Source: Phyllobates terribilis
Lineage: Eukaryota
Assembly (NCBI RefSeq): GCF_046119375.1
Contig: NW_027362769.1
Span: 363,382,001-363,446,000 of the forward strand
Reading direction: 5' to 3'
DNA length: 64,000 bases
Shown piece after piece: positions 22,998-62,191 of the stretch; the first letter of the stretch is position 1; the number at the start of each line of letters is the position of its first letter. The translations under genes were made by a program, and so were the position numbers. The notes beneath the pieces were generated by a model. It was not told the origin of the DNA and made no database searches. It saw only the letters and a program-made list of their open reading frames with translations.

Positions 22998-25787
22998 ATG
23001 GGAGGAAGAGAAACCAATCACAAACTAAAATGTTTTTATACAAATGCACAAAGCATGGGCAACAAACAAGGAGAATTGGAACTACTAATGCAGGAAAAGG
23101 AATATGATGTCATTGGAATCACTGAAACTTGGTGGGACGATACACATGATTGGAATAAAAGGCTAAAAGGATACAACTTATTTGCAAGAAACAGACTTGA
23201 TAAACGAGGAGGAGGTGTTGCATTGTATGTTAGAAAAGCGTATATCTGCACAGAGATTGAAGCTTCAGAGACTGGGAGTTCTGTGGAAACTGTTTGGGTA
23301 AGAATACAAGGAGAGAACAACGGAAAGGACACCATTGTAGGCATTTACTACAGGCCACCTGGGCAAGCTGAAGATATGGATGAACTCTTTATGTATCAAA
23401 TGACCAAGTTCTCCAAAAAATATGACGTAGTGGTCATGGGAGATTTCAACTATCCAGACATTTGTTGGGAATCTCTCTCAAGTAAAACTAACAGGTCAAG
23501 CAAATTCTTATCCTCTCTTGCTGACAACTTTATCTTCCAAAAGGTAGGGGAGAAAACAAGGGGATCTGCTACTTTGGATCTAATCCTTATAAACAGGGAG
23601 GAAATGGTTGAGGAGGTAAAGGTGGCTGGGACCCTAGGAGGCAGCGATCATGCTATTATAGAATTTTGGATAACTAGAGGAGGAAGACATGTGAAGACTC
23701 AAACTTCAAGGTTAGATTTTAGAAAGGCAGATTTTAAGAGACTCAGAAAGAGAATAGGAGGGATCCAATGGCTGGATGTCCTTAAGGACAAAAATGTCCA
23801 GGAAGGATGGGAAATTTTTAAAAATGAGATTCTCAAAGCACAGTCGTTAACAATCCCGAAAAGTAGGAAGAATGGGAAGCATTTAAGGAAACCAGGATGG
23901 ATGAACACAGAACTTAAACACATGCTAAAAAGAAAGAAAGAAAGGTTTATTAAATGGAAAGAGGGAGGCATATCTAAAGAAGATTATAATGCAGTCTGCA
24001 GATCCTGCAGGGCACGTATCAGGTTAGCTAAAGCTGACAATGAATTAAGGCTTGCAAGAGATGTCAAAAGCAATAAAAAAGGATTTTGGGGGTATGTCAA
24101 AAGTAAAAGAAAAGTCAAAGATGCTATAGGATTTTTACAGGATGAAAATGGAGAAATGGTAAGAGAGGATGTTGAGAAGGCCGAACTTTTTAATTCCTAT
24201 TTTGCATCTGTTTTCTCTCAGAAAGAAAATGTAACATCAACTGATCTTCACTGTCCTTTTAAAGGAATAGAGGAATCCAAGTTATCAGTAAACAGAAAGA
24301 TTGTGAGGGAATATTTAGCTAACTTAAATGAGTTCAAGTCTCCAGGTCCAGATGAATTACACCCCAGAGTACTGAAGGAGATTGTAGAAGAAATTTTAGA
24401 ACCACTCTCCATAATCTTTGAAAATTCTTGGAGAACAGGAGAAGTCCCAGAAGACTGGAGAAGAGCAAATGTTGTTCCTATCTTCAAAAAGGGGAAGAAG
24501 GTGGACCCAGGGAACTATAGGCCGGTGAGTCTGACATCTATACCAGGAAAGATCTTTGAACAAATTATTAAACAACATGTATGTAAGTACATGGATAAGA
24601 ATGAAGTGATTAACCAGAGTCAGCATGGGTTTGTAACTAACAAGTCATGTCAGACTAACTTAATTTCCTTCTATGACAGAATCACTGACTGGGTGGATCA
24701 GGGAAATGCTGTAGATATAGTATATCTTGACTTCAGCAAAGCATTTGACAAAGTATCTCACATCATCCTTATTGAAAAAATGACCAAGTATGCAATGGAC
24801 CAGGCAACTGTTAGGTGGATTCATAACTGGCTTAGTGATCGGACTCAAAGGGTGGTTGTAAATGGCTTCACATCCAGCTGGATGAATGTCTCAAGTGGGG
24901 TACCACAGGGCTCCGTCCTGGGACCTGTATTGTTCAACATCTTTATCAATGATTTAGATGAAGGAATTGAGGGTAAACTGATTAAATTTGCTGATGACAC
25001 AAAGCTAGGAGGGATAGCTAATACTAGAGAAGAGAGAGAGAGGATTCAAAAAGACCTAAATAAACTGGAGCAGTGGGCAGCAACCAACAGAATGGTTTTT
25101 AACAGGGAAAAATGCAAAGTACTACATCTGGGCAATAAAAATGAAAAAAGCATATACAGAATGGGAGGAATAGAGCTAAGCAACAGTACATGTGAAAAAG
25201 ACTTAGGTATACTAATAGATCATAGACTGAACATGAGTCAACAGTGTGATGCAGCAGCAAAAAAGGCAAATACAATTCTGGGATGTATTAACAGAAGCAT
25301 ACAGTCTAGATCACGTGAAGTCATTATCGGTCTTTACTCCTCTTTGGTCAGACCTCATCTGGAATACTGTGTACAGTTTTGGGCACCACATTTTAAAAAA
25401 GACATCGACAAACTGGAGCAAGTTCAGAGAAGAGCGACCAGAATGGTGACTGGTCTGCAAACCATGTCCTATGAGGAACGGTTGCAGGATTTGGGAATGT
25501 TTAGCTTGCAAAAAAGAAGACTGAGAGGAGACTTAATAGCTGTCTACAAATATGTCAAGGGCTGTCACATTGTAGAAGGATCATCTTTATTCTCATTTGC
25601 ACAAGGAAAGACTAGAAGCAATGGGATGAAACTAAATGGGAGGAGACACAGATTAGATATTAGAAAAAACTTTTTGACAGTTAGGGTGATTAATGAGTGG
25701 AACAGGCTGCCACGAGAGGTGGTGAGTTCCCCTTCAATGGACGTCTTCAAACAGAGGCTGGACAGACATCTGTCTGAGATGATCTAG
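22998..25787 (+). CDS. CR1 ORF2: apurinic-like endonuclease plus reverse transcriptase (929 aa)
   Basis: TNAQS, GITETW, YYRPP, GDFN, SDHA; YRPVSL, QHGF, LDFSKAFD, GVPQGSVLGP, FADD. Confidence 0.95.
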   Translation: MGGRETNHKLKCFYTNAQSMGNKQGELELLMQEKEYDVIGITETWWDDTHDWNKRLKGYNLFARNRLDKRGGGVALYVRKAYICTEIEASETGSSVETVWVRIQGENNGKDTIVGIYYRPPGQAEDMDELFMYQMTKFSKKYDVVVMGDFNYPDICWESLSSKTNRSSKFLSSLADNFIFQKVGEKTRGSATLDLILINREEMVEEVKVAGTLGGSDHAIIEFWITRGGRHVKTQTSRLDFRKADFKRLRKRIGGIQWLDVLKDKNVQEGWEIFKNEILKAQSLTIPKSRKNGKHLRKPGWMNTELKHMLKRKKERFIKWKEGGISKEDYNAVCRSCRARIRLAKADNELRLARDVKSNKKGFWGYVKSKRKVKDAIGFLQDENGEMVREDVEKAELFNSYFASVFSQKENVTSTDLHCPFKGIEESKLSVNRKIVREYLANLNEFKSPGPDELHPRVLKEIVEEILEPLSIIFENSWRTGEVPEDWRRANVVPIFKKGKKVDPGNYRPVSLTSIPGKIFEQIIKQHVCKYMDKNEVINQSQHGFVTNKSCQTNLISFYDRITDWVDQGNAVDIVYLDFSKAFDKVSHIILIEKMTKYAMDQATVRWIHNWLSDRTQRVVVNGFTSSWMNVSSGVPQGSVLGPVLFNIFINDLDEGIEGKLIKFADDTKLGGIANTREERERIQKDLNKLEQWAATNRMVFNREKCKVLHLGNKNEKSIYRMGGIELSNSTCEKDLGILIDHRLNMSQQCDAAAKKANTILGCINRSIQSRSREVIIGLYSSLVRPHLEYCVQFWAPHFKKDIDKLEQVQRRATRMVTGLQTMSYEERLQDLGMFSLQKRRLRGDLIAVYKYVKGCHIVEGSSLFSFAQGKTRSNGMKLNGRRHRLDIRKNFLTVRVINEWNRLPREVVSSPSMDVFKQRLDRHLSEMI

Positions 25788-29171: not shown

Positions 29172-29700
<529 letters not shown>

Positions 29701-30740: not shown

Positions 30741-31376
30741 GTTACCGAATAGGAAGTTCCCGCTAAGGGGCTGATGGCTTTTTCTGTCCTTCTGTATCAC
30801 GTAGTTTCAGGACTGTCGGATATCAGGAAATTTGCTTGTGTTGAGCGATCAATGGTCTCTTGGTTCCATACAGGAATTTCTATCATTTTCCAGGATCCAG
30901 GGAACAGTATCCGCTTTCTATAAACACAAAGTGCAGAACTGATTCTAACAATGGTGACTCCATCACACCAGCAATATTCCGAGTGCCGGGAATATAAAGA
31001 AACGAGATACTGCAGTTTACAGAGAACTTTGAAAGAAGGAGGTGGGGATTTTATAAAATGTAGGTTAATATTATCTAGATAAACCTACTACAGAGCTGCA
31101 GAGGATATTAGTCTCTTAATCCTGATACGTTTTCAGGATCAGACCCGTGCGGCTGATAGGAGTCAGCGAGTGTTCACAGGAGATAGCGCTGGATAATGGA
31201 CGTCCTATAATGATCGCATCATATACACCAAGAAATCTGCGCATTTTTTCTAGATTTCTTCACAACACCGTACAGACTCCTAATAGATTATATAAAGATA
31301 TTATTCAATAATCAGGGCAGAGAAGCTGATGTGAGGGATTAGCTCGTTATTATGGAGGGAAAATACTAAAACCCTA

Positions 31377-31690
31377 TGTGTCATATTTGTCTGTACCTAT
31401 GCCTATGGTAGATTGTTTAGTCATATTTGTCTATACCTATGCCTATGGTAGATTGTTTAGTCATATTTGTCTGTACCTATGCCTATGGTAGATTTTTTAG
31501 TCATATTTGTCTGTACCTATGCCTATGGTAGATTTTTTAGTCATATTTGTCTATACCTATGCCTATGGTAGATTTTTAGTCATATTTGTCTGTACCTATG
31601 CCTATGGTAGATTGTTTAGTCATATTTGTCTGTACTTATGCCTATGGTAGATTTTTAGTCATATTTGTCTGTACCTATGCCTATGGTAGA
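31377..31690. repeat. ~39-bp tandem repeat, about 8 copies, in the left MULE TIR
   Basis: GTCATATTTGTCTGTACCTATGCCTATGGTAGATTTTTA; one inverted copy at ~42595-42635. Confidence 0.9.
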
Positions 31691-32351
31691 TTTTTTACAG
31701 TTACAACTCGCTTCTCTGTGTTCCTGAGCTGAGAGAGGCAGGGGGATGTTTTGAGAGTGAGATAAGGCTGGAAGCTAATGTTAATATTGTCTACCTTGAG
31801 ATAGTTTATAAACCCTCCTCTCACACATCCAGGACCCCAGCAACCACAGAATGCAGAGTAAGTGGACATGCTAGCTGGGGCATATCTTACAGAAGTCAAG
31901 CTGCAACACCAGGCTCTCCCATCATCACTTTGGTAAGTATTACGAATAACAGTTTTAAGCTCTGTTTTTTTTATTGGAATAAGTTCATATTAGTGACAGA
32001 AAGTTACTTTCCCAGTTTCATTAAGATTTTTTTAGGGATTCAGTCTTTATGTGCCGCCATATTCTTCCATACCTATGCCTAGAGTGGTTATCATGGTTGG
32101 AAACTGAATAACAGTTTTAAGCTCCGTTTTTTTTTTTATTTGAATAAGTTCATATTAGTACAACAAGGTTATTTTTCCAGTTTCATCAAGATCTTTTTAG
32201 GGATTCAGTCTTTATTTGAATTATAAAGTTGCTATATAGGAATGTATGGGTGTTCAACTTTCTTCCCAAAATAATCTCTGCTAATGGTAACTAGATCTTC
32301 CATCTAAATATAGCACAGTAAATGTTATCTGTCCTCAATCTAGCTTGCCAT

Positions 32352-33459
32352 CAGTGGCGTACCGCCAATGGCGGCAGACCACGCGACTGCTATGGGGCCC
32401 GTGAGCCGGGGGGGGCCCCATAGCAGTCCAGGGGTGGACATACCGCCGGTGCAGCTGCACCGGGGCCTGGAGGGTCATGGGGGCACTTGCCGGGTGGCTA
32501 ATGTTGAGAGGCGGGCAGGGATCGATCCCTGCAGCTCCGCTGCCATGAAAATCTGATCAGATGAGACATCAGTGGTAAGTGCCTGGATGTAAATATTATT
32601 CTGTATCTGCACTGTGTGACTTGGAGTGATAATGTTATCTGTAAAATCCCTTAGGCTGCATTCTCACATTTGTGTGAGAAATGTCCAGATTTTTTTATCG
32701 AATGGTCCATGGACTCGTAGAGTTCTATACATCCATTCACACATCCATGAAAATCATGGATCTGAGAATGAGATCTGTGAGGGTCAGAGAATGTCCTGTT
32801 CTGATCCGATTTTGAGGATTAGAATAGGACATGCTCAATATGTCTGTAAAATAGGGCAGCACACCAACACTGCACACAGATACAAGAATGTAGCCTTATT
32901 ATGTATAGCACAGTCCCTTAGAATATAGTGTATTCACTTATTATGTATAGCACAGTCCCTTAGTATATAATGTACTCACTTATTATGCATAGCACAGTCC
33001 CTTAGTATATAGTGTACTCACTTATTATGTATAGCGTTGTCCTTAATTATTTAGTTTCATCTTTTATTATGTATAACACCCTCCCTTATTACCTACCATC
33101 CCCTCTAGCTCTAGTGGGTCACAGTTAGGGGATCATACTGTGTTGGGTTCAGCATACTTTGCCCTGGGAGTTGAGATGGGGTACAGTAGGGTCATTATAC
33201 TGCTCATGTGGAGGAATTCACCTTGGGCGTATCATTGTGTTTGGGGGGGGGGGGGCACTTTTGTTGGCATCATACCTTATGGGGGCAATGAAAGAGGAAC
33301 CTAGGACTTCAGCAGGAGGAAAATTACTATGTAAAGGCTGGAAAGTTGTGAGATCTGCTCTTCTGTGATCCCGACAATTATTTACATTTTTTTGGGGGGC
33401 GGGGGGGGGGCAATTAGAACTTCTGCTATGGGGCCCCATGATTCCTATGTACGCCCCTG
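32352..33459. mobile_element. hAT non-autonomous element nested in the MULE
   Basis: CAGTGGCGTAC ... GTACGCCCCTG TIRs; 8-bp TSD CTTGCCAT/CATGCCAT (7 of 8 match). Confidence 0.8.
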
Positions 33460-34019
33460 CATGCCATATAATAAATGGCTCCATACAATGTAGCTGCCTC
33501 TGCTGAAGTCAAGTTTTCACTTCCAGGATGGATGATAATTCTTCGGTTTGGGTTTGTTGGGGATAAAACTTGGAGTACTGTACTGGTAGCTGCAAACGTT
33601 GGACCTCTGCACGGTCTGTCAAATTTTCTTCATGCCACCGGTAGGAAAGTGCTTTAAGCCGGCATGGTTGTTGACCTTACCATACTCACCCTACTGTCTT
33701 ATACGTTGTCTATTACTATTTACAGTTAAAATGTAGGAATATACAGTATCATAACGGTTATCTAAAGTGCTTCTATTTTAAAGGATATATCTTGTTAGTG
33801 TCTCATACAAAGTATTTGTGGATATGGTGTAAAAGTTACCAACTTTTCTGACATTTCAGAGGATACAATTTCACTAATTTGGAGAAAAGGTCCACTGGAC
33901 AACCCTGCTACATAGGATATTTCTCTTCAGTATGCTTACATTCAAGAACTAACAAAAAGGTAGTATGAAGTTTTGTGTGATTTATGGCTTAGCTTCTTTT
34001 GATACTAATCTTAAGTATA

Positions 34020-34973
34020 TGTGTCGCCCAGGGGATGGGGACTACTCGGAACCCGGGCCTTGTTACTGGGGATGTCGCGGTAGTCGGCTCCCGGGCCCGT
34101 ACTCTGGGCCTCTCTTTAAAAAGGGTGGATGATTATTATATGGAAGTTCGTGACACCACCTGTGGTGTCTGGTGAGGTTCACCAGTGCTGCGGCAGTCCG
34201 CTGAGGCCGATGATAAGGCAGCTCGGTGGTATAGCTCCCCACAGGTGGAGCTAGGCCCCAGGGCAGTGTATGAAGAGGGGAATGCAGGACGGGGAAGCCC
34301 AGTCGGGCCTACGGAAAGACAGGCAAACACACACAGTTCTCTTCAGTACCTTTTACTGATGGAATTCAGGCACATCCCGGAGCGCTGTAGGGTGAAGGGT
34401 GCATTGCCGGATTCTCCCCCAGGGAGCGGGGATAGGGCCTCCCGTTTCCTGCCTTTGTGTGGTAAGTTTCTGACCTGCCTGTAGCTAAGCCTAACTTTGT
34501 CTCTGTCCTGCACTGGCTGAAGTTGTGGTAGGGCCTTCTCTTAGAGTGCACGCTCCCAGCTTGCGGGGCCTATGTGTCTCCTGGCTCTGTTACGTATCAG
34601 CGCTTTAGTGATTCTGAGACCTGTAGTTCTCCAGGGTTTCCAGTTGTACTTTACTGGGTCATAGAGATCCCGGTAACTTCGGACTCGGTGTCCGGTATAA
34701 GTTTCGGGGTGAGCTGGTTAAGCTCCTCTGCCCCCAATGCTACTAACTCTCGACTCGCCTTCGGCCACGCTCGGGCCTTCACTAGGCTACTCACACTAAC
34801 GGCAGCTTGCCACGCTTCACCGCTCTAAACGGCGTCGGCACGCCTTGGGCTCACTTACTTGAGCTCCGGAGTCTGGACTGGGCCTCAGGATTGCTGGAGG
34901 CACAGTTTACCTCACACGGCAACCTGGAACTGCTCTGCACACTTGCTCCTCTCCCTGTGCACTTGGTACCACA
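34020..34973 (-). mobile_element. Solo LTR or LTR fragment related to the cold-shock-domain LTR family, nested in the MULE
   Basis: Begins TGTGTCGCCC; shares CAGTCCGCTGAGGCCG and GCAGCT..GGTGGTATA blocks with the LTR at 8051; right end uncertain. Confidence 0.5.
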
Positions 34974-35092
34974 TTTACTTAAATTTTAAAATTGCTTTTC
35001 ATTTCAGACTGAATTTTATTTTATTGAATCAGCTTTGGCTTCAAGTAGTTTTGAATAATTTAAGATTTCTAATTTTGCATTAAATAATTAAA

Positions 35093-35095
<3 letters not shown>

Positions 35096-35155
<60 letters not shown>
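35096..35155. repeat. (TA)n microsatellite
   Basis: Direct reading. Confidence 0.95.
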
Positions 35156-35163
<8 letters not shown>

Positions 35164-35171
35164 TTATTTAA

Positions 35172-36172
35172 AGAGTAACTATCAATTGTTTTAAATTAAT
35201 ATTTTTATTATGTTAAAAAAATTGAATAGGTCTTCATTATTATTTTTTTTAGTTTTTGTAACTATTCCTACACTAAACTGTCCCTAACGCTGCGTTTTTT
35301 GCTACGTTTTTTTATGCTAATTATGCTAATTTAAAGCAGCAAAGTACAGTACCAGCAAAGTCTATGAGATTTGCAGAATTGCTGTTCACACGCTTGTTCT
35401 TTTTTACCTGCATTTCTTGTTTATTAACTGCTTTTTTCAAAGAATGAACATGTCAAATCTTTGCTGCGTTTTTTGCTGCTTTGCTCCATAGGAAGCAATG
35501 ATAAGGCAAAAACAGAGCAAAAACGCAGCAAACCAACATTTTGCAAGCAGGTCAAAAGTTCATGGTTTTTCCAAAGATTTTTGCTGCTACCTAATTAGCA
35601 TAAAAAACGCAGCAAAAAACGCACCGTGTGAACTTAGCCTAAATCACTCAGTTGCAAAAACGCAACCGACTGTCCCTTGCCAAGCTATCCTCCTAAACCG
35701 TTTTCACATTGAAGACGCTTTAGTACAATGAATGCGCGTCCCCGGGCATCACATGAGTGCTTAGCTCGCTTCTCATGGGAAGAGAGCCAGCGCACCGCTG
35801 TACTGAATGAATGGCAGCCGTGCCATCCCAGGCGCCATGTAATCTACTGCACTGCAACCCCGGGAGACATCTCCTGAGGCTTCAGCGTATATACGTTCTG
35901 TATATAGACCGATGCTGCCTGCGCAGCATGGCTCTGTATACCGCGATGTGCGGGCACTCCGGCGAGGACGCCCACACGTCATCAGCCGGCGTGCACGTGC
36001 ATCCTGGCATTTGTTCAGTTGCGGGATGGCCCAGAAGAGGAGCTTCGTGGATCGACAGGAGTGTAATTAAGAAGTTTTTTATTTTTAAACTGGTCCAAAT
36101 GGGTTCAGGGGGGAGGGGGGGGCCCAAAAAAAAAAAAAAAAGAAAAGAAAAAAGGTAAATGATAGTTGATCT
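35172..36172. mobile_element. Kolobok/T2-type MITE (TTAA flanks), itself carrying nested inserts
   Basis: TTAA-AGAGTAACTATC ... GATAGTTGATCT-TTAA; homologous to 40319-40709. Confidence 0.65.
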
Positions 36173-36266
36173 TTAAATGACTTCTTGTTTTGGTTTTTAT
36201 ATTGTTTGAATTTCTGTATCTTTTTTTCATAATTAAAAAAAAAGTTCTTTACAGGAATTTTGAACA

Positions 36267-39200
36267 ATGGGCATCAAATCTTTGGTAAAGAAAAATAAAA
36301 GAGAATCTACAGTACCAGAGAATGAAGAAATACAAAAAAACCCAGGCAAAAATAAGGACGTGACAAAATTAAGTTCCGAACAAACAGTTTCAGAGACAAC
36401 TAATTCACATTCAACATCAAGATTTTTAGCATTGTCTCTTCCATTTCACAATAAGAAGAAACCAAAAAGTGGTGGAAATTTAAAGAAATGTATATGCACT
36501 GAAGACTTATTGAAAGCTGCTACTAGAGTGTTTGAAAGAAGTCCAAACACTGAAGTGAATTCAAGCGTTAGTAGTGGGAGCTTCTGGTGCAAGCTTGCAG
36601 AAGAAGTAGCGCCAAAAACCAAAACGCACAGAAAAAAACTTATCCGAAATTATAGCTTAGCATGTAGAAACCTCTGGGACACAGATTTCAACTTTAGAGA
36701 ATGTATTATGAAAGTCACCAACAAAGAAAAATGTGAAAAACAAGGAATCCCACGGCAACCTCTTTCTCAAACTATTGGTGAACAAAGTCTGCCTACATTA
36801 AATGAACAAAAACCAGAACTGGAGAATGAAATGAAGAAGGGTTGTGATGACAGCGCTCTTGGTAAATACAACAAGAGTGAAGCAGTGTCTGATGACATGG
36901 AATCATTCACTGGAGACAACAGTTACTGTTCAGAGAAAGGGCTACATGAAAGTAATTCAACTGGTAAGGATGAATTTGTGATTTATGAGCCCAAAAATAT
37001 TACCAATAACAATGTTTACACAAAAATACTGACAAAATTAACACCAACTGAAGCATTTGAGATTCTGAAGAAAGGTGATAAGTGTAGGGTGACCAATTTG
37101 CCACCACTTAATCCACAGCATGGTTATGTGTTTTACTTTTACAAAGAAGGAAAAGCAAGGGATTGCATAGCAGATCAATTGCAGTTTGATTACATCTCCA
37201 GGAATAAGTATACCTTTAAAGGGGAAACATGCTTCAAGGTTATATACAAGCCAAGACACCCACCAGAAGAGGCATGTGAACTTTTTGAAAAGTACATTTT
37301 TAGCCTCGGTCAAACTGATAACAGTTGCAGGCTAATTCAGTACTTTGGAAATCCAAATACAATGCAGCTTAAAGCCCATGGTAATCGCAAACACTACAAG
37401 AACAAGATATTTTTTACTACTGCACCATCAATCATTAAAGAGCAGAGGGAAAACTTATCACAGCCACCCATGAAAGTTTATAAAGCACAGTGTACACGTT
37501 TCATACCTCCACAATATGAAGCTGCTTTAGGACCGCGTGATGTAAAGCAGGCACAAAACAGTGCTATGAGAGAGTGTGTAAAGCGTCGTTTGTGCCAAGA
37601 TGATGTTTATTCCATAGTTGAATTGGAGCGCTTGTTTGGTGGTTTTGTAATGCAGCTAGATGTCCTACATGATTTCTATTGTATCCTTGCAAAAGAAGAA
37701 CTAATAGAAGAAGCGAATACATTTGCAAAACACAAGGACAGCAACTTTAGTTGTGACACAACTTTCGAGTTTGGTGATTTTTATGTGACTACTGTCACAT
37801 TTAACCACCCTGCTTTTCAAAATGCATGTGTAATTTCAATTTTCATATTGATGCACCAAAAGAAAGATGAAGGTACACACAGAAAGTTCTTCAATTTTAT
37901 TTCTGAAAAGTGTCCAGCATTTAACAGCAACATGGTGAAAATCATTACTGACCGTGAAAAGGCAATTACAAACAGTATAGATGCACAGCTTCCCCAGGTT
38001 AAACGATTCCTGTGTTGGAACCACATGAGGAAAGATGTGCAATACTGGACGCAAAGGCATGGTGGACAACAAATGGACAAATTAACATATGAAAGCTGTA
38101 TTTACAGTTTAATGAACAGCAAGACACCAAACGAATATGTAAGTAAGTTAGAAGAACTTAGCCAACATTGGACAGAAGAATTCCTCACTTACTATAAGAA
38201 GCACCTGGAATCAGATATCCTCAATTACTGTGCACGGTGGCTTTTAGAAGAACACAACATGTTCATAGAACCTTCAGGAATAACAACAAATCAAAGTGAG
38301 AGTTTTAATTCTGTGCTAAGAAGACTTCATGATGGGAAAGAAATAAACATGGAAGGTTTTGTTCTGTCTATGTTTTACTTAACTTCTTACTACACAAAGG
38401 AAGTTCTGAGAGGGAGATGTGGACTGGGTAACTTCAACCTGAAAGGAGAGTTCCGGGCTCTTAACCCAGCTGATGTATCATTTCCTGAAGTACTGGTAAC
38501 ACCCGAAAGCTTGGTGGAATTTGTAAAGGAACAAAAACTTGTGATCACAAAAGAAAATGCATGTAAAACAGGAAGCCATCTGCCAAGAAGAACAATGGCA
38601 GAAGGAATTCTCAATACACCAGGTGGTATTGTGTTGGTGCCACAGCAGAAAGTATTCCTTGTTAAAGGTTTTAAAAATGAATCTTACATTGTGCAACTTT
38701 TCCCAAAGACTTCTTGTTCATGTCCATCATCCAGACAGTGTCACCACATTATGGCAGTTCAGCTATCAGTGGGATTGGATCCAAGGGAAGAGACAGATGA
38801 AGGAAATCTAAGCAGGTTGTACAAAAAACAAAGGGGAAAAGGAAAAAGTGGACGGAAGTTCACTTCTAAACCATTATTGACATCTCCAGCCGATGACTCA
38901 ATCCAAAGCATGAATCTAAATAATGGAGACGAGGAGGCAATACTTACAACACAAGTTATGCCAGGATACAGTGCACGAACTGCAAAAATTGTTAAAATAT
39001 CACCACCTGAACCATCCGTAGGTATGTCTAAACTTCATGTCTTAACCACAAAAAAGCTTGTTCCAGCAAGTAAGTCAAAAGCGGTCATTGTGAAAAAGAA
39101 ACTAAATTTGCAAAAGCCTCTGAAAACATCAACCCCAAAACAAAGTATAAGATCAGAGGCAGAGTCACTGAAATACTACAAAACCAGTAGAATGAAGTCA

Positions 39201-40235
39201 ATCAGTGCAATTGCTGAGACACATGCACATAAACTACCAAATGATGTTATCGCTGAAGTGGACCGTATAATGATCAAGAAGATCAACATGGATACTTTAA
39301 GTGGACAGCAGTGGCTGGATGACACAATTATTGATGCATACTTGGCACTACAATGTAGTGTAGCCATGGGGAAAAACCCTCACCTGAAATTTGCCTACAT
39401 TCCATGTAACTTCGTTGAAGCATTTTGCAAGAAGTGGACTAAAAGCAAAACACCCTATCACACTACAATGATACATGGGAAGAGAAACAACATATGGCAC
39501 AAGGATATCATATTAATACCTTGCTATATATTTGGCAACCATTGGGTGCTAACAATAGTAGTGCCAAAATATAGAAGTGTCTATTATATAGACAGCAAGT
39601 ACAGTGCAGAGGATAAGAAAGTTGTACAGGCAGTCCATGTTCTTCTGAAGGTGTTATCCCATTTGTGTGAAGGAGAGCCATATAACAAAACATGGAAATG
39701 GGTGAAGCCAGTTGATGTCCTGATACAGAAGGATGGCTCCAGTTGTGGAGTTTATGTTTGTATCTGCGCACATGTTTTAGCAAATGGGACCACCATTTGA
39801 CTAAACCATGATGAAGTACACAACTTTCGTGATTTTATTTCTACTGAATTACAAGCAGTGGTTCCAGGCACAGTAAAAGTTACCACACTTACTGGTGATA
39901 CAACTGTGACACTCCCAGAAGTAAGTAGTCAGTGGTGGTCAGATGCAGATTTTACACCAACTGTGCAACCAGGACCTCAAAACTTTTGTACTCTTAATTG
40001 GATGACTAATTTATGTAATACAATTTGGGAAGCCAATTCAAGCATCTGTTATGCAGGAGTGAATTGTTGCCAGCCTAATAGAAATGTGTGTGCAACAGAG
40101 GAAGATATGAAAATGGTTTTCTGTGAATTTGCATGCCAAGAATGGTACCACAAAGCATGTGAAGGACTATCTGATAAACAATTACCATCTATGTACAAAT
40201 GCAGAAAATGTCAAAATGCTGAATTTGAGGTGTAA
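36267..40235 (+). pseudogene. MULE transposase - SWIM - Ulp1/C48 protease - PHD finger ORF (1322 codons) with one in-frame TGA at 39798-39800
   Basis: DDE motifs CDTTF, TDREKAI, CWNH, TTNQSESFN; SWIM CSCPSSRQCHH; Ulp1 WLDDTII, NHWVL, YIDS, QKDGSSCG; PHD C..C..FCEFACQEWYHKAC..YKCRKC; 39801-40235 continues in the same frame. Confidence 0.85.
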
Positions 40236-40318
40236 AGTACCTTTTCCTTGTTAGTATGTAACATTATTAAGCAACTTATGTTTTAAGTGTAAACAGAATA
40301 TGTTTGATTTCTTTTTAA

Positions 40319-40709
40319 AGAGTAACTATCAATTTTTTGTTATTAACATTTATTATATATATGAAAAAAATTTTTTTGAATAGGTCTTTTTTTTTATTCT
40401 TACATTTTTCACACATCCTACAATAATCTGTCCCTAAATCACTAGTTTGAAAACATGCAACTAACTGTCCCTCGCTAAACTATTCTCCTAAAGCGTATTC
40501 AGATTGAAGACGTTTTAGGAGAATGAATGCCCGAGGATGCGCGTGCACGCGCATTCCGGCAACTGTTCAATTGCACTTTGGCCCAGAAGAGGAGCTTTGT
40601 GGGCCGACAGGAGGGTAAATAAGAAGTTTTCTTATTTTAAACAGGTTCTAATGGGTAAAGGGGGTAAGGGGATTCTAGAAAACAACCCTTCAAACATGTT
40701 AGTTACTCT
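40319..40709. mobile_element. Kolobok/T2-type MITE
   Basis: TTAA-AGAGTAACTA ... TAGTTACTCT-TTAA. Confidence 0.7.
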
Positions 40710-41019
40710 TTAATATGGTTTTGTCAAGTATTCGTAATCCATTCAGTTGTGTAAATGTTAATTTAAATATTTCTCCAAAATAAAAGTTTTATGTAACTTA
40801 GACTTGATGCTATGTTTTGATTTGTTTTAAATAAGGTTATGTCAATATTCGCAATCCGTTCAGTCATGTAAGTGTTCACTTAATTTTTTTTCTGTAATGA
40901 AAATACTTTTATGTAATTTATACTTCATCATCTGATCTAGGATTCAGCATTCATTTCAAATCTACAGTAACATATATGAGACTTGTGTTTACAACAGACA
41001 GCTTAATTTCGCCTCATAA

Positions 41020-41325
41020 GGGCTCGTTCACACAGACAGCGTTTGCGCGTTTTTTCAGCGCATCCGTCCTGCACTGAAAAAGTGAGCCTATTGTTGTCAA
41101 TGGGCTAGTGCAGACACTACGCTTTTTCTGCGCATCGAACGGATGCGCAGAAAAAAGCGACAGCTTGTCCGTTTTTGCCGCGCAGAACGGACTGCCGCCG
41201 CCTATTTGAATGACTGTGTGAGCTAAAAACCAGCGACACAGTAATTCAGCATGCTTTTCTTATACGCGTGCGCATAAAAAGCGCATGCACATAACGGAGC
41301 CGAAACGGCCAGTGTGAGTGAGCCC
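41020..41325. mobile_element. PIF/Harbinger-like MITE
   Basis: TAA | GGGCTCGTTCACAC ... GTGTGAGTGAGCCC | TTA. Confidence 0.7.
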
Positions 41326-41829
41326 TTAATTTTTTTTAAAATAAAGTAAACTGTATATTTTATTTTATCAGTAAACTGAGATCAGAGAGATTATATAAAT
41401 TAAGAAAACCATTTAAAAAAAAACTGTGCCACTGCCATAGTCTTGTGTGAAAATCAAACAAACAAAAACAAGGGCTTTAAGGCAAAATTTTTCGATAAAG
41501 ATCTACTTAGGGATTCACTGTTTATTTGAAATGTAAAGTTATTATATAAGAATGCATGAATTAACATGGTTGAAAACAGAATTAGATTTTTAAGCTCTGT
41601 TTTTCTTGTTGGAATAAGTTCATATTAATGACAAACTTATTTTCAGAGTTGCATCAAGATCTTCTCAGGGATTCAGTGTGTATTTGAAATTTAAAGTTAC
41701 TAAATAGAAATGTATGGGTTTGCCTTGTTGAAAACACAATTATAGTTTTAACCTCTGCTACTTTATTTTTAAATAGAGTGAAGTGGAAATGAAAAATACA
41801 TTAAAAAAATTCAACTGTAAAAAAAAAAA

Positions 41830-42460
41830 TACCATAGGCCTAGGTATGGCAGAATGTGGCGGCGCATAAAGACTGATTCCCTAAAAAGATCTTAATGAAA
41901 CTTGGAAGATAACCTTGTTGTACTAATATGAACTTATTCCAATAAAAAAAACGGAGCTTAAAACCGTTATTCAGTTTCCAACCATGATAACACACTAGGC
42001 AGAGGTATGGAAGAATATGGCGGCGCATAAAGACTGAATCCCTAAAAAGATCTTAATGAAACTTGGAAGATAACCTTGTTGTACTAATATGAACTTATTC
42101 CAATAAAAAAAACGGAGCTTAAAACCGTTATTCAGTTTTCAACCATGATAACACACTAGGCATAGGTATGGAAGAATATGGCGGCGCATAAAGACTGAAT
42201 CCCTAAAAAGATCTTAATGAAACTTGGAAGATAACCTTGTTGTACTAATATGAACTTATTCCAATAAAAAAAACGGAGCTTAAAACCGTTATTCAGTTTC
42301 CAACCATGATAACACACTAGGCAGAGGTATGGAAGAATATGGCGGCGCATAAAGACTGAATCCCTAAAAAGATCTTAATGAAACTTGGAAGATAACCTTG
42401 TTGTACTAATATGAACTAATTCCAATTAAAAAAAAGGAGCTTAAAACTGTTATTCAGTTT
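41830..42460. repeat. ~158-bp tandem repeat, about 4 copies, in the right MULE TIR
   Basis: Inverted homologues at 31940-32220 (left TIR) and 41500-41760. Confidence 0.9.
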
Positions 42461-42671
42461 CCAAAAAAGTTAACCCCTACATTCATGTATAGCAACTTTA
42501 TGTCAAATAAATACATAAGTAAATAAATTGGTTATTCTGCTTCAAATAGAGTGAAATGGAAAGGAAAACTAAATTAAGAAAATGAAACTGTAAAAAAAAA
42601 CTACCATAGGCATAGGTATAGATAAATGTGGCACATAGGGTTTTAGTATGCACCATTATGGAGGATTTGGT

Positions 42672-42687
42672 GGCTCTGAAAAGAGCC
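42672..42687 (-). terminator. Histone 3' stem-loop of H3
   Basis: Minus strand GGCTCTTTTCAGAGCC ACCAA. Confidence 0.95.
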
Positions 42688-42716
42688 TTTGTGTTAGTCA
42701 GACGTGTAGGACGGAT

Positions 42717-43181
<465 letters not shown>

Positions 43182-44446: not shown

Positions 44447-45103
44447 TTATTTCTTAGCTGCGGGCTTCTTGGCTTTAGCTGCCTTCTTAGCAGGACTCTT
44501 GGCAGCTTTGGGTTTAGCAGCTTTCTTAGCCGGACTCTTCGTCACCTTCTTGGGCTTCGGAGCGGCCTTTAGCTTCTTGGGGCTCTTGGCCGCCTTCTTG
44601 GCAGCTGCTGCGGGCTTCTTGGCCTTTTTCGGGCTCTTCTTGGCCGCGGTCGGAGCCTTCTTGGGCTTCTTAGGAGACTTGGCGGCTTTCTTGGCTGCAG
44701 CAGGCTTCTTGGGCTTGGCATCAGCTGCTGACTTCTTCCTGGCCGCTTTGTCCTTAGTCTCCTGCTGCTTCTTGTTCAGCTTGAAGGACCCGGAGGCGCC
44801 GCTGCCCTTCACCTGGAGGAGGGCGCCCTTGGTGACCAGAGACTTGACGGCCAGCTTCAGGCGGCTGTTGTTCTTCTCTACATCGTATCCTCCGGCACAC
44901 AGAGCCTTCTTCAGGGCGGCCAGAGACACCCCACTGCGCTCCTTAGAGGCGGACACGGCTTTCACGATCAGATCGGAGACGCTGGGACCGGAGGGCTTCT
45001 TGCTTTTTTTGACGCCCCCGGCGGCGGATTTTTTCGGCTGCTTCTTGGATTTGGCGGCCGGTTCCGCGGGAGGGGGAGCGGCGGCTGGTGCGGTCTCTGC
45101 CAT
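44447..45103 (-). CDS. H1: Linker histone H1, somatic type, 218 aa (true ATG at 45103)
   Basis: [15 protein letters not shown]; globular domain [39 protein letters not shown]; Lys/Ala/Pro-rich tail with SPKK motifs. Confidence 0.96.
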
Positions 45104-45195
45104 CGTGTGCTGCGGAACTAGAACACAAATATCTCCTGATAGGAAACAAAACACTGAGGCCGGAGCTGGAGGCGCCTGTTATATGTACAGGCTTA

Positions 45196-59290: not shown

Positions 59291-62191
59291 GTGAGGCAAG
59301 CAAGGGGGAAGGGGAGAAGTGAATATAATGAGGGTGGAGAGGGGGGTGGGGATAGTACAGTTAGATCGTTAGAGAAGAATAGGATGCTAAATAACCCCAA
59401 AGTTTTATCTTGCATGCTGACCAACGCAAGAAGCCTGACCAATAAGGCGGATGAGCTGCGGGCGCTTATATCGGAGGAGAGGTATGACATCGTAGGTATA
59501 ACAGAGACTTGGCTAGACGATAGCTACGACTGGGCGGTAAATTTAACAGATTATAGTTTATTTAGAAGGGACCGGAAACAGGGGAAGGGCGGAGGAGTCT
59601 GCTTATATGTAAAGTCACGTCTAAAGCCCAGACTAAGGGAAGATATAGGAGAGGGAGAAGAGGGGGTCGAGTCCATGTGGGTAGAGATAGAGGGGGCAAA
59701 AAATAATAATAAAATATTACTGGGGGTCTGCTATAAGCCACCCAATATAACAGAGGAGAATGAGAAACTGCTATTAGGACAAATAGACAAAGTAGCAAAA
59801 CATAATGAGGTGATTGTAATGGGGGACTTCAACTACCCGGATATTGACTGGGAAACAGAAACCTGTAGATCGCAGAAAGGAAAAAGGTTCTTGACAAATA
59901 TCAAGGATAATTATCTCTCCCAACTAGTGCAGGAACCAACGAGAGGGAAGGCAGTGTTGGACTTAATATTGACTAATAGGCCTGATAGAATAACTGAGGT
60001 ACAGATAGGGGGGCACCTAGGTAATAGCGATCATAATATTATCAATTTCAAAATGCCCTTCAGTAGGGTTATCAATAAGGGAACAACTAAAACATTAAAC
60101 TTTAGGAGGGCGAAGTTTGATCAGCTGAAAGAAAACCTTCAACTTATAGACTGGGACAAAGTTCTTAATCAAGGAAATACGAATAGTAAATGGGAAACCT
60201 TCAAAAGAATTCTGAATACTCAGTGCGAGAGGTATATACCGTATGGGAATAAAAGGGCCAGAAATAAGAGGAAACCAATATGGTTGAATAAGAACGTAAA
60301 AGGGGCGTTAAATAGCAAAAAAGAGGCATTCAAGAGATTAAAACAGGAAAACAGTAAGGAGGCACTAATGTGTTACAAGGAAAAAACGAGAACCTGCAAA
60401 AAACAAATAAAAATAGCAAAGGAGGAAACAGAGAGACGTATTGCTAGGGAAAGTAGATCAAATCCCAAACTGTTCTTTACGTATATAAATAGTAAAAGGA
60501 TTAAATCGAATAATATTGGACCGATAAAAAGTGATGAAGGCAAAATCATAAAGAAAGATGAGGATAAAGCTAATCTATTAAATACATTTTTTTCGTCAAC
60601 TTTCACAAAGGAAAAAGAATTAACAGGCGAAATGAGAAGTGACAAGCTTAATCCTCCACTAAGTATGACAAATCTAACCCAAGCTGGGGTACAGAAACGC
60701 CTCAGTAACATTAAAATAAACAAATCACCAGGACCTGATGGCATACACCCACGGGTACTAAGGGAACTAAGTAATGTGATAGACAGACCATTATATCTTA
60801 TATTTAAGGACTCTGTTGAGACTGGGTCTGTACCACTTGATTGGCGACAGGCGAATGTAGTGCCAATATTCAAAAAGGGAGCAAAAAGTATCACCGGAAA
60901 CTATCGGCCGGTGAGTCTGACGTCCGTTGTGGGCAAAATTTTTGAAGGCTTTATTAATGAGGCAATCATGGAGCATCTTGATGCTAATAATCTATTAACC
61001 CCGAACCAACATGGATTCATGAGGAATCGCTCCTGCCAAACAAACCTGATTGACTTCTACGAGGAGGTGAGCTCTCGAGTAGATCAGCGGGAACCAGTGG
61101 ATGTCGTGTATCTCGACTTCTCAAAAGCGTTCGATAGCGTGCCACATAATAGGTTGGTATACAAAATGAGAATGATGGGGCTGGGGGAAAATGTCTGCAA
61201 GTGGGTAGCTAACTGGCTAAAGGATAGAAGGCAGAGGGTGGTTATAAATGGAATATACTCAGATTGGGTAAGCGTCACTAGTGGGGTACCACAGGGGTCT
61301 GTACTAGGCTCAATGTTATTTAATATCTTTATTAACGACATAGTCAACGGGATAAATAGTAAAATATCAATATTTGCAGATGACACAAAGTTATGTAAAA
61401 CAATTAATACAAAAGAGGACAGTGCAGACCTACAGAGGGATTTGGATAAGCTGGGTAGGTGGAGCATTAAATGGCAAATGAGGTTTAACGAGGAGAAATG
61501 TAAGGTCATACATATGGGAAGGAAAAATGGAAGTCACCAGTACTCACTGAATGGGAAATCATTGGGGAATTCAGAGATGGAGAAGGACTTGGGCATCTTG
61601 ATTGATAGCAAACTAAATTGGAGTGCCCAAAGTCAGGCCGCTGCTGTAAGGGCAAACAGGGTAATGGGATGTATCAGAAGAGGTATAGCTGCAAAGGATG
61701 AGAACATTGTTCTTCCACTGTACAAAGCACTGGTCAGACCACACTTGGAATACTGTGCTCAGTTATGGGCCCCAATATATAGAAAGGATATAAATGAGCT
61801 TGAAAAGGTACAAAGGAGGGCAACAAAATTAATAAGGGGAATGGAGGGACTGCAATACCCAGAGAGGTTGGCAAAACTAGGACTATTCAGCCTGGAAAAG
61901 AGAAGGTTGAGGGGGGACATAATAAATGTGTACAAATATGTTAGGGGACAGTATAGAGACCTTGCCCGGGATTTGTTCAAAAGGAGGGATATTACGGTAA
62001 CAAGAGGGCATTCACTAAGACTGGAAGAGAAAAGGTTTCAGCACCAGCATAGGAAGGGGTTCTTTACGGTAAGAGCAGTGAGAATATGGAATTCACTGAG
62101 TGAGGAGACGGTAATGTCGGATTCACTACACCAGTTCAAGCGGGGACTGGATGCTTTTCTAGATACCAGGCAGATTTCTGCATATACTTAA
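59291..62191 (+). CDS. CR1 ORF2: endonuclease plus reverse transcriptase (start codon uncertain)
   Basis: TNARS, GITETW, YKPP, GDFN, SDHN; YRPVSL, QHGF, LDFSKAFD, GVPQGSVLG, FADD; open throughout. Confidence 0.95.
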   Translation: MRQARGKGRSEYNEGGEGGGDSTVRSLEKNRMLNNPKVLSCMLTNARSLTNKADELRALISEERYDIVGITETWLDDSYDWAVNLTDYSLFRRDRKQGKGGGVCLYVKSRLKPRLREDIGEGEEGVESMWVEIEGAKNNNKILLGVCYKPPNITEENEKLLLGQIDKVAKHNEVIVMGDFNYPDIDWETETCRSQKGKRFLTNIKDNYLSQLVQEPTRGKAVLDLILTNRPDRITEVQIGGHLGNSDHNIINFKMPFSRVINKGTTKTLNFRRAKFDQLKENLQLIDWDKVLNQGNTNSKWETFKRILNTQCERYIPYGNKRARNKRKPIWLNKNVKGALNSKKEAFKRLKQENSKEALMCYKEKTRTCKKQIKIAKEETERRIARESRSNPKLFFTYINSKRIKSNNIGPIKSDEGKIIKKDEDKANLLNTFFSSTFTKEKELTGEMRSDKLNPPLSMTNLTQAGVQKRLSNIKINKSPGPDGIHPRVLRELSNVIDRPLYLIFKDSVETGSVPLDWRQANVVPIFKKGAKSITGNYRPVSLTSVVGKIFEGFINEAIMEHLDANNLLTPNQHGFMRNRSCQTNLIDFYEEVSSRVDQREPVDVVYLDFSKAFDSVPHNRLVYKMRMMGLGENVCKWVANWLKDRRQRVVINGIYSDWVSVTSGVPQGSVLGSMLFNIFINDIVNGINSKISIFADDTKLCKTINTKEDSADLQRDLDKLGRWSIKWQMRFNEEKCKVIHMGRKNGSHQYSLNGKSLGNSEMEKDLGILIDSKLNWSAQSQAAAVRANRVMGCIRRGIAAKDENIVLPLYKALVRPHLEYCAQLWAPIYRKDINELEKVQRRATKLIRGMEGLQYPERLAKLGLFSLEKRRLRGDIINVYKYVRGQYRDLARDLFKRRDITVTRGHSLRLEEKRFQHQHRKGFFTVRAVRIWNSLSEETVMSDSLHQFKRGLDAFLDTRQISAYT

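What the first reader, a model, noticed from the sequence alone, without database searches (positions are those of the whole stretch)
31358..42654. 11.3 kb Mutator/Foldback transposon encoding a transposase-SWIM-Ulp1 protease-PHD fusion in a vertebrate
Seen: perfect 9-bp TSD, G-initiated inverted termini, long TIRs made of 39-bp and 158-bp subrepeats, all three DDE residues, a SWIM finger, a complete His-Asp-Cys Ulp1 triad and a PHD finger, with only one nonsense codon in 1322 codons. Established: Ulp1-bearing MULEs are known mainly from plants (KAONASHI-type) and coding MULEs are rare in tetrapods. Inference: a near-intact autonomous element that pairs a putative deSUMOylase with a histone-tail reader, a plausible way to counter SUMO-dependent piRNA/heterochromatin silencing. 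Horizontal transfer from an invertebrate lineage is possible but untested.
Basis: partly seen in the sequence, partly recalled or inferred. Interest (0 to 1): 0.82.

Follow-up and report, generated by a model that had tools for sequence, protein, structure and literature searches.

The report
Young Mutator transposon in a poison frog
This is a real, recently amplified cut-and-paste Mutator-type transposon in a poison-frog genome whose single gene fuses a transposase to a SUMO-protease-like domain and a PHD finger; the fusion is already known from invertebrate Mutator elements, but a young multi-copy one in a tetrapod is unusual.

Summary
The element spans 31358-42654 and is flanked by a perfect 9-bp duplication (ATTATGGAG). 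Its inverted ends start with GG. Its arms are built from a 40-bp unit (8 copies left, 1 right) and a 161-bp unit (about 1.7 left, 3.9 right).

One intron-less frame (36267-40235) encodes, in order:
- a CG-1/WRKY-like DNA-binding domain;
- a DDE transposase (D497, D562, E678, CxxH);
- a SWIM finger;
- a SENP/Ulp1-like protease (H1092, D1109, Q1154, C1160);
- a PHD finger.

A single TGA at 39798 interrupts this frame. Contigs from the same species and from two other coded organisms read a sense codon there, so the stop is not shared by the copies those contigs sample.

The family looks multi-copy. This copy differs at 16 of 4125 bases from the same-species contig. Histone H1 places the host among dendrobatoid frogs.

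The novelty claim is overstated. Ulp1-bearing Mutator elements were reported from hydra and lancelet (PMC2836005). Library proteins whose accession series I recall as invertebrate align across transposase, SWIM and protease; PHD is confirmed only in unnamed relatives. The nearest relatives are at most about 40% identical, so horizontal transfer remains untested, and the anti-silencing role is conjecture.

Verdict: a new vertebrate member of a known kind. It bears on a published question of whether Mutator elements exist in vertebrates at all.

The parts
31349..31357 (.). left copy of the 9-bp target site duplication, ATTATGGAG
31358..31379 (+). left terminus, starts GG, then the shared ATACTAAAACCCTATGTG
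31380..31697 (+). array of 8 copies of a 40-bp unit, each holding TACCTATGCCTA
31944..32215 (+). about 1.7 copies of the 161-bp unit, inverted relative to the right-arm array
32352..33459 (.). nested hAT-like non-autonomous element. The ends are CAGTGGCGTAC and the reverse complement of CAGGGGCGTAC. The flanking 8-mers CTTGCCAT and CATGCCAT match at 7 of 8 positions.
   Evidence: read by eye, family not tested
35156..36119 (+). leader region upstream of the ORF. Three blocks recur at 76-81% identity downstream of the ORF. It contains an extra piece with a very high-copy core at 35602-35640.
   Evidence: (D5, D7, D9)
36267..39800 (+). main ORF of 1177 aa. The N-terminal 246 aa are predicted disordered.
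37005..37421 (+). CG-1 / WRKY-like DNA-binding domain (aa 247-385)
37644..38546 (+). DDE (RNase H-like) MULE transposase core with D497, D562, C583/H586 and E678
38685..38759 (+). SWIM zinc finger (C817, C819, C825, H827)
39309..39797 (+). SENP/Ulp1-like C48 protease domain (W1016, H1092, W1093, D1109, Q1154, C1160)
39798..39800 (+). in-frame TGA, 17 codons after the catalytic Cys. It cuts off the last part of the protease domain and the PHD finger. Contigs laid from three other runs read a sense codon here.
40047..40211 (+). PHD finger with 8 zinc ligands. The first Cys pair has a wide spacing that is typical of this family. The Met and Trp of the WxH motif are kept.
40303..40671 (+). diverged second copy of the upstream leader blocks
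41473..41719 (+). unit-like copies in the opposite orientation to the right-arm array, forming a local hairpin
   Evidence: I9-I11; D4, D6
41835..42464 (-). 3.9 copies of the 161-bp unit: a minisatellite ahead of the 3' terminus
42594..42654 (-). right terminus with one 40-bp unit; its outermost bases are GG
42655..42663 (.). right copy of the target site duplication, ATTATGGAG

Best explanation
This is one copy of a young, multi-copy, single-gene DNA transposon of the Mutator (MULE) superfamily in a dendrobatoid frog. It inserted 8 nt downstream of the stem-loop of a histone H3 gene.

Shown:
- a 9-bp target duplication and G-initiated imperfect inverted ends;
- arms made of 40-bp and 161-bp units that carry TACCTATGCCTA in inward-facing orientation, 9 times on the left and 5 times on the right;
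- an intron-less gene whose product has a CG-1/WRKY-type DNA-binding domain, an RNase H-like DDE core with all catalytic residues, a SWIM finger, a SENP-like cysteine protease with a complete catalytic set, and a PHD finger.

Inferred for transposition:
- the N-terminal domain binds the repeated arm motif;
- the DDE core cuts and rejoins with a 9-bp stagger.

Inferred for the C-terminal module:
- the protease-PHD module is an accessory carried by the transposase itself;
- the PHD finger docks on histone H3 tails, probably H3K4me3;
- the protease removes SUMO or a related modifier from nearby proteins, which favours transposition.

This particular copy has a nonsense codon, not seen in the other copies sampled, that removes the end of the protease domain and the PHD finger. 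Its full-length product therefore cannot be made. Sister copies read a sense codon at that place.
For: Structure and residues.

Superfamily:
- Pfam MULE is above its cutoff in relatives, and Transposase_mut hits 7 of them.
- The fold matches FAR1/FHY3/FRS proteins, the Drosophila NOF-FB protein, K. lactis alpha3, ZSWIM1/3/9, IS256-family transposases, and the solved ISCth4 and Hermes transposases.

DNA-binding domain:
- CG-1 hits in 16 of 61 relatives.
- A profile of the domain hits solved WRKY domains; 5 of the 6 best matches are WRKY.
- The domain model (pLDDT 91) matches CAMTA CG-1 models at TM 0.64.

Protease:
- Best solved matches are SENP1 (1.7e-9), SENP2 and Ulp1, and the fold agrees.
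- The catalytic columns are conserved in 25-27 of 27-29 relatives at about 25-30% identity.
- The QWLDD and HW tryptophans are kept. In Ulp1/SENP structures these clamp the Gly-Gly tail (my knowledge of that literature).

Youth and copy number:
- One 4125-nt contig from a same-species DNA run differs at 16 places and has word depth 112 in a 2.1-Gbase run.
- Other laid pieces range from above 99% to below 90% identity.
- All three other runs with cover at 39798 read a sense codon there.
- Five other coded organisms (B to F) hold 7-54% of the 31-mers.

No second ORF of 100 aa or more carries a domain hit.
Against: - MULE and SWIM fall below Pfam cutoffs in this protein itself.
- The protein departs from near-invariant family residues at four places: P468H, Y496C next to catalytic D497, P521C and P524S. 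Activity is therefore not assured.
- Word depth is not a copy number, and the run's library type is only guessed.
- Transcription is not shown. The RNA-labelled runs could contain DNA, and their depth is only 1-7.
- No other copy's boundaries were seen, so mobility rests on this one TSD plus the spread of copies.
- Nothing tested here shows what the protease cleaves or what the PHD finger binds.
Confidence: 0.85

Rival explanations
1. Anti-silencing module. The PHD finger brings the SENP-like protease to chromatin over the element. There it strips SUMO from the SUMO-dependent heterochromatin machinery (piRNA-guided or KRAB-ZFP/TRIM28/SETDB1-type), which keeps the element expressed.
For: Catalytic residues and Gly-Gly-clamp tryptophans are intact, and the best solved matches are SENP1/2. 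The module is kept across relatives at 25-30% identity. The family is multi-copy and young in a genome group known for TE expansion (PMC6278860). The SUMO dependence of these silencing pathways is my own knowledge, not something tested here.
Against: There is no functional data. The W-x-H tryptophan and the Met resemble H3K4me3 readers, which mark active chromatin rather than silenced chromatin (inference). A full-text search found no paper proposing or testing this role. Many family members lack the module, although many of those are fragments.
Confidence: 0.25
2. Targeting and repair module. The PHD finger tethers the transposase to H3K4me3 or open chromatin and so biases insertion toward active genes. 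The protease acts locally on SUMOylated chromatin or DNA-repair factors to allow integration and gap repair.
For: The PHD finger keeps the Met and the W-x-H Trp in 6 of 7 family members aligned. This copy landed 8 nt past the stem-loop of a histone H3 gene, which is a highly transcribed locus. PMC2836005 suggested a link between TE-borne Ulp1/OTU domains and DNA repair. The preference of plant Mu elements for open chromatin at gene 5' ends is my own knowledge.
Against: Only one insertion site was seen, so no preference can be inferred. The binding specificity of this PHD finger was not tested.
Confidence: 0.3
3. Self-processing protease. The C48 domain cleaves the long fusion protein into separate transposase and accessory parts, as clan CE proteases of some large DNA viruses process polyproteins.
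For: A long disordered linker (aa 861-990) separates the transposase from the protease. A conserved SGRK-x-P motif follows the SWIM finger.
Against: No Gly-Gly motif is present in the linker (read). The linker is poorly conserved. The best matches are SUMO/NEDD8 isopeptidases, not viral processing enzymes.
Confidence: 0.07
4. The element is not recently mobile. Its many near-identical copies arose because an old insertion was co-amplified with a tandemly repeated histone cluster.
For: The copy sits inside a histone cluster, with H4 at 29172-29483, H3 at 42717-43127 and H1 at 44447-45154. No second insertion site was inspected.
Against: Only one copy lies in the 64-kb window. Laid contigs show a spread of identities from above 99% to below 90%, and the 5' leader is heterogeneous between copies, as expected for a dispersed family. 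Related copies occur in at least five other coded organisms.
Confidence: 0.07

Closest known systems
MuDR-type elements with a Ulp1 domain from Hydra and Branchiostoma (Repbase Reports 2008/2009, as cited in PMC2836005)
   Same: An animal Mutator transposase with a C-terminal Ulp1 domain. Figure 1e of that paper aligns Ulp1 and PHD domains of Ginger1 and Mutator transposases. AlphaFold DB clusters hold proteins aligned across query residues from about 260-480 to about 1176.
   Different: The host here is a tetrapod. The sequences of those Repbase entries could not be fetched, so identity and exact domain order were not compared.
Rehavkus group (Repbase; described in PMC6446971)
   Same: [quoted passage not shown] Here the minisatellite is the 161-bp x 3.9 array.
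   Different: Rehavkus is reported only from arthropods and annelids, and no Ulp1 domain is mentioned for it. Sequence relatedness was not testable here.
Foldback / NOF of Drosophila
   Same: Arms built of tandem subrepeats with unequal copy numbers. The fold of the core matches the NOF-FB 120.7 kDa protein P16320, ranked 3 at E 6.5e-13.
   Different: NOF carries no protease or PHD hit that I know of. The match is structural and its TM score is low, at about 0.17.
Plant KAONASHI-type (KI-) MULEs and VANDAL elements
   Same: Mutator elements that carry a Ulp1-like protease domain (PMC2836005).
   Different: The plant Ulp1 is usually a separate gene (my knowledge). Here it is fused in frame to the transposase and followed by a PHD finger, and the lineage is different.
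Ginger1 transposons of Hydra
   Same: A transposase with a C-terminal Ulp1 domain, and in one family Ulp1 plus PHD.
   Different: The Ginger1 catalytic domain is a Gypsy-type integrase, not a MULE. The shared module suggests repeated acquisition or exchange.
SENP1/SENP2/Ulp1 SUMO proteases
   Same: Same fold, same catalytic His-Asp-Cys plus Gln, and the same pair of tryptophans.
   Different: Identity is only 17-22%. The domain lies inside a transposase, and its substrate is unknown.

Membership tests
Mutator / MULE superfamily | DDE transposase of the MULE/IS256 type, with a C/DxxH motif between the second D and the E | tested here: met
   D497, D562, C583-x2-H586 and E678 lie in near-invariant columns. 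Pfam MULE is above its cutoff in relatives. The fold matches FRS, NOF, IS256-family and ISCth4 proteins. In this protein alone MULE scores 22.9 bits against a cutoff of 27.6.
Mutator / MULE superfamily | Target site duplication of about 9 bp (8-11) | tested here: met
   A perfect 9-bp ATTATGGAG lies on both sides. Only one insertion was seen.
Mutator / MULE superfamily | Long terminal or subterminal inverted repeats | tested here: met
   The terminal arms are 56 nt at 89% complementarity, and there are 143-nt inverted units at 88-91%.
Mutator / MULE superfamily | N-terminal WRKY-GCM1-type DNA-binding domain and a SWIM finger after the core | tested here: met
   A profile of the domain hits WRKY4, WRKY1, WRKY45, WRKY33 and WRKY2, with a best E-value of 0.0012. 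It also has CG-1 matches. The SWIM ligands are invariant.
Rehavkus group | PHD finger in the transposase and a minisatellite before the 3' inverted repeat | tested here: met
   PHD scores 25.4 bits against a cutoff of 24. The 161-bp x 3.9 array lies at 41835-42464. The definition is taken from PMC6446971.
Rehavkus group | The transposase clusters with Repbase Rehavkus sequences | not testable with these tools
Foldback elements | Long inverted arms made of tandem subrepeats, with variable copy number between the arms | tested here: met
   The 40-bp unit occurs 8 times on the left and once on the right. The 161-bp unit occurs about 1.7 times on the left and 3.9 times on the right.
Ulp1/SENP (peptidase C48) | His-Asp-Cys triad with an oxyanion Gln, and a domain score above the curated cutoff | tested here: met
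   H1092, D1109, Q1154 and C1160 are present. Pfam scores 53 bits against a cutoff of 20.7. SENP1 matches at 1.7e-9.
Ulp1/SENP (peptidase C48) | Cleaves SUMO (or NEDD8) conjugates or precursors | not testable with these tools
   This needs an enzyme assay.
PHD finger | Cys4-His-Cys3 ligand pattern | tested here: met
   Eight ligands are present in the piece after the TGA (residues 83, 90, 108, 112, 117, 120, 134 and 137 of that piece). The first pair is spaced x6 rather than x2, as in relatives P0001 and P0013. The Pfam score is only just above the cutoff.
Zisupton superfamily (considered) | 8-bp target site duplication (from my memory of Bohne et al. 2012) | tested here: not met
   The TSD here is 9 bp, and the core matches MULE rather than another superfamily. 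A full-text search for Zisupton with Ulp1 found nothing.

The most novel reading that the evidence does not exclude
A transposase-borne, chromatin-tethered deSUMOylase is a counter-defence. The PHD finger positions the SENP-like protease on chromatin, where it dismantles SUMO-dependent transposon silencing. This would have let a Mutator family stay active in a tetrapod germline. The module has been taken up independently by Mutator and Ginger elements.
Probability: 0.15. Interest if true: 0.85.

Novelty: new member of a known kind. Interest (0 to 1): 0.5.

Why it matters
A 2019 survey of Mutator elements found almost none in chordates. It judged the vertebrate Repbase entries mis-identified and asked outright whether MULEs are absent from vertebrates (PMC6446971).

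This element answers that question for a frog. It has an unambiguous MULE transposase with every catalytic residue, a clean 9-bp duplication, many near-identical copies, and relatives in other coded organisms.

Named relatives of the transposase also sit in caecilian and teleost protein sets.

A naturally intact sister copy would be a candidate active DNA transposon of a tetrapod. It would also be a tractable system for asking why unrelated transposases (Mutator, Ginger) keep acquiring SUMO-protease and PHD modules.

Tried and rejected
- Intron hypothesis for the TGA: rejected. Three uninterrupted relatives align through it in one frame, and no splice joints appear in RNA-labelled contigs.
- Second gene: none found. 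No ORF of 100 aa or more elsewhere in the element has a Pfam hit.
- Other copies in the window: none. All tblastn hits lie at 36993-40214 on the + strand.
- Viral vector: a scan of viral contigs found no relative.
- Word-indexed protein search with the family alignment: it returned nothing, which was a wasted search. The first such search found only P0001.
- Tree of the core: the window sequence groups loosely with unnamed sequences, near a clade holding the fish and caecilian proteins. Branches are long and no support values were read, so it says nothing on horizontal transfer.
- Recent capture of the protease from a host SENP: unlikely. The domain is 17-22% identical to SENPs but aligns with the protease of distant family members.
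- Zisupton: rejected on TSD length and core type.
- Earlier-scan index: several notes labelled 'same genome' describe plant-type Mutator elements. That does not fit a frog genome, so I did not rely on them. The look-up by sequence was blank.


Full report
**Anatomy**

The stretch 31358-42654 is bounded by a perfect direct repeat of nine bases, ATTATGGAG, at 31349-31357 and 42655-42663. Both ends begin GG. After three or four mismatches they share ATACTAAAACCCTATGTG in inverted orientation. The terminal arms are 89% complementary over 56 nt.

The arms are unequal mosaics of the same units:
- A 40-bp unit stands eight times on the left (31380-31697) and once on the right.
- A 161-bp unit stands about 1.7 times on the left (31944-32215) and 3.9 times on the right (41835-42464).
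- The right arm also folds on itself, with unit-like copies at 41473-41719 in the opposite orientation.

A 12-mer, TACCTATGCCTA (one mismatch allowed), occurs nine times on the + strand of the left arm and five times on the - strand of the right arm. About 0.3 occurrences are expected in the whole window. I take this 12-mer as the candidate transposase binding site; that is inference.

**The gene**

One ORF, 36267-39800, is open for 1177 codons. It ends in TGA, and the same frame then runs on to TAA at 40233-40235. Three relatives with uninterrupted proteins (P0001, P0013, P0028) align in this single frame from about 37038 to 40214, straight through the TGA. No splice joints were seen in RNA-labelled contigs. 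The gene is therefore intron-less, and the TGA is a true nonsense codon. It lies 17 codons after the catalytic cysteine of the protease.

Pfam gives the following scores:

| Domain | Score (bits) | Cutoff (bits) |
|---|---|---|
| Peptidase_C48 | 53 | 20.7 |
| PHD | 25.4 | 24 |
| MULE | 22.9 | 27.6 |
| SWIM | 17.8 | 19.6 |

The two sub-threshold calls are rescued in three ways:
- Relatives pass the MULE cutoff, and some also hit Transposase_mut.
- In an alignment of 34 to 61 family members the window protein keeps every near-invariant catalytic or ligand residue: D497, D562, C583, H586, E678, C817, C819, C825 and H827, plus H1092, D1109, Q1154 and C1160 in the protease.
- An AlphaFold2 model has pLDDT above 90 over residues 250-750 and high confidence over 1000-1177. 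It matches FAR1/FHY3/FRS proteins, the Drosophila NOF-FB protein, K. lactis alpha3, ZSWIM1/3/9 and IS256-family transposases. Among solved structures it matches the ISCth4 and Hermes transposases for the core and SENP1/2/3/5/7, Ulp1 and NEDP1 for the C-terminal domain.

**The DNA-binding domain**

Residues 247-385 form a four-to-five-stranded sheet domain.
- In 16 of 61 relatives this region hits Pfam CG-1, the DNA-binding domain of CAMTA transcription factors, with a best E-value of 1.8e-11.
- A profile of the domain finds solved WRKY domains; five of the six best matches are WRKY, the best at E 0.0012.
- A domain-only model (pLDDT 91) matches CAMTA-type CG-1 models at TM 0.64, and NAC and WRKY domains more weakly.

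This is the WRKY-GCM1 class of domain expected at the N-terminus of a Mutator transposase. The CG-1 link was not found in the literature library.

**The accessory module**

The protease keeps the His-Asp-Cys triad, the oxyanion Gln and the two tryptophans (QWLDD and HW). In Ulp1/SENP structures those tryptophans clamp the Gly-Gly tail of SUMO; that point rests on my knowledge of the literature. Its best solved matches by sequence are SENP1 and SENP2.

The PHD finger has eight ligands. The first pair is widely spaced, which is typical of this family. It keeps the Met and the W-x-H tryptophan, which in other PHD fingers form part of the methyl-lysine cage (inference).

The catalytic columns of the protease are conserved in 25-27 of 27-29 relatives at only 25-30% identity. 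This argues that the activity matters to the element.

**Host, copies and age**

The neighbours are histone genes:
- H4 at 29172-29483;
- H3 at 42717-43127 on the minus strand;
- H1 at 44447-45154.

The best H1 matches are Ranitomeya variabilis, Phyllobates terribilis, R. imitator and Anomaloglossus at 82-93% identity. The host is therefore a dendrobatoid frog.

Public runs of the same coded organism hold 73-86% of the ORF's 31-mers. Three other organisms hold 52-54%, which corresponds to about 2% divergence. Two more hold 7-17%.

When reads were laid on 35400-40400:
- One DNA run of the same species gave a single 4125-nt contig (36235-40359) with 16 differences and word depth 112 from 2.1 Gbases.
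- Other pieces ranged from above 99% to below 90% identity.

If the genome is of the size reported for a poison frog (6.76 Gb; PMC6278860), that depth points to tens to hundreds of copies. The tool warns that depth is not a copy number.

At 39798, three runs read another letter that makes the codon a sense codon: that DNA run, a DNA run of another organism, and an RNA-labelled run of a third. The stop is therefore not shared by the copies those contigs sample.

RNA-labelled runs cover parts of the ORF at depth 1-12, but contaminating DNA cannot be excluded.

**State of this copy**

Besides the TGA, the copy carries a nested hAT-like element at 32352-33459 with near-matching 8-bp flanks.

The ORF is framed by three blocks of 76-81% direct repeat (35156-36119 against 40303-40671).

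The protein departs from near-invariant family residues at four positions, one of them next to catalytic D497. Only 16 differences separate this copy from the same-species contig over 4125 nt. These departures are therefore probably family-wide in this host, but I did not check whether any of the 16 falls on those four codons.

**What is known**

A profile-free scan of 1.84 billion representatives found 2621 relatives, 164 of them below 1e-30. None was above about 40% identity.

The same architecture (MULE, C48, PHD) occurs uninterrupted in P0001, P0004 and P0013. MULE plus C48 occurs in a spider-mite protein. MULE plus PHD occurs in a teleost protein. A MULE-core protein is shared by two caecilian genera.

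AlphaFold DB clusters list many proteins aligned across transposase, SWIM and protease. Their organism names were hidden. From memory of the accession series they include aphid, Daphnia, mussel, annelid and lancelet.

PMC2836005 states that Ulp1 is encoded in Mutator elements of hydra and lancelet as well as plants. It aligns Ulp1 and PHD domains of Ginger1 and Mutator transposases.

PMC6446971 describes the Rehavkus group as having a 9-bp TSD, a PHD finger and a minisatellite before the 3' repeat, which fits this element's layout. The same paper reports almost no MULEs in chordates and asks whether they are absent from vertebrates.

The architecture is therefore known. The host range and the youth of this family are the news.

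**Mechanism and rivals**

Cut-and-paste transposition by the DDE core, with arm-motif recognition by the N-terminal domain, is well grounded.

For the protease-PHD module I rate two readings about equally:
- chromatin tethering with local deSUMOylation that aids integration or repair;

Self-processing is unlikely, because the linker has no Gly-Gly site.

Amplification by histone-cluster duplication rather than transposition is unlikely given the spread of identities. It was not excluded, because no second insertion site was seen.

Horizontal transfer is untested: no close relative outside the frog runs was found, and none in viral contigs.

Noticed in passing
window 42655-42720 and 31330-31357 (minus strand): The element sits in the 3' processing region of the histone H3 gene (42717-43127, minus strand). 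The stem-loop GGCTCTTTTCAGAGCC is followed by 8 nt and then the target duplication. A purine-rich AACGAGCTAA, possibly the U7-binding element, now lies 11.3 kb away on the other side. This H3 copy may be mis-processed.
   Followed up: partly
window 37005-37421; alignment A3: The N-terminal DNA-binding domain of this Mutator clade is homologous to the CG-1 domain of CAMTA transcription factors. Pfam CG-1 hits 16 of 61 relatives, and the structural match has TM 0.64. The domain also profiles onto WRKY domains. A full-text search found no paper linking CG-1 to transposases. CAMTA's DNA-binding domain may share ancestry with a transposase domain, as FAR1/FHY3 does.
   Followed up: partly
window 32352-33459: A nested hAT-like non-autonomous element of 1108 bp lies inside the Mutator element. 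It has CAG-initiated inverted ends, and its 8-bp flanks match at 7 of 8 positions.
   Followed up: partly
window 35156-36119 and 40303-40671: The leader upstream of the ORF is repeated, at 76-81% identity and with deletions, just downstream of the ORF. The origin is unclear: it could be a tandem duplication of a gene unit or a second lost gene.
   Followed up: no
window 35602-35640: A 39-bp core has very high word depth (513-1740) and many different loose ends in runs of three organisms. It is a fragment of some very abundant repeat.
   Followed up: no
P0014 / P0166 (caecilian proteins): A 518-520 aa protein with the CG-1-like domain and the MULE core, but no SWIM, protease or PHD, is shared at 90% or more by Geotrypetes seraphini and Microcaecilia unicolor. 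It may be a domesticated gene. The Geotrypetes record is named tyrosine--tRNA ligase, which looks like a mis-annotation.
   Followed up: no
L001:3700-6300: The closest full-length relative lies on a marine metagenome contig. It is also followed by degenerate subrepeat arrays, spaced about 160-190 bp apart, with 47-48-bp tandem units near the contig end. Repeat-built arms therefore seem to be a family trait.
   Followed up: partly
window 22998-25787 and 59291-62191: Two long open non-LTR retrotransposon ORFs encode endonuclease plus reverse transcriptase (929 and 966 aa). Both are on the + strand.
   Followed up: no
window ORF residues 468, 496, 521, 524: The frog protein carries H, C, C and S where more than 90% of relatives have P, Y, P and P. 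One of these positions is adjacent to catalytic D497. They could be lineage-specific adaptation or reduced activity.
   Followed up: no
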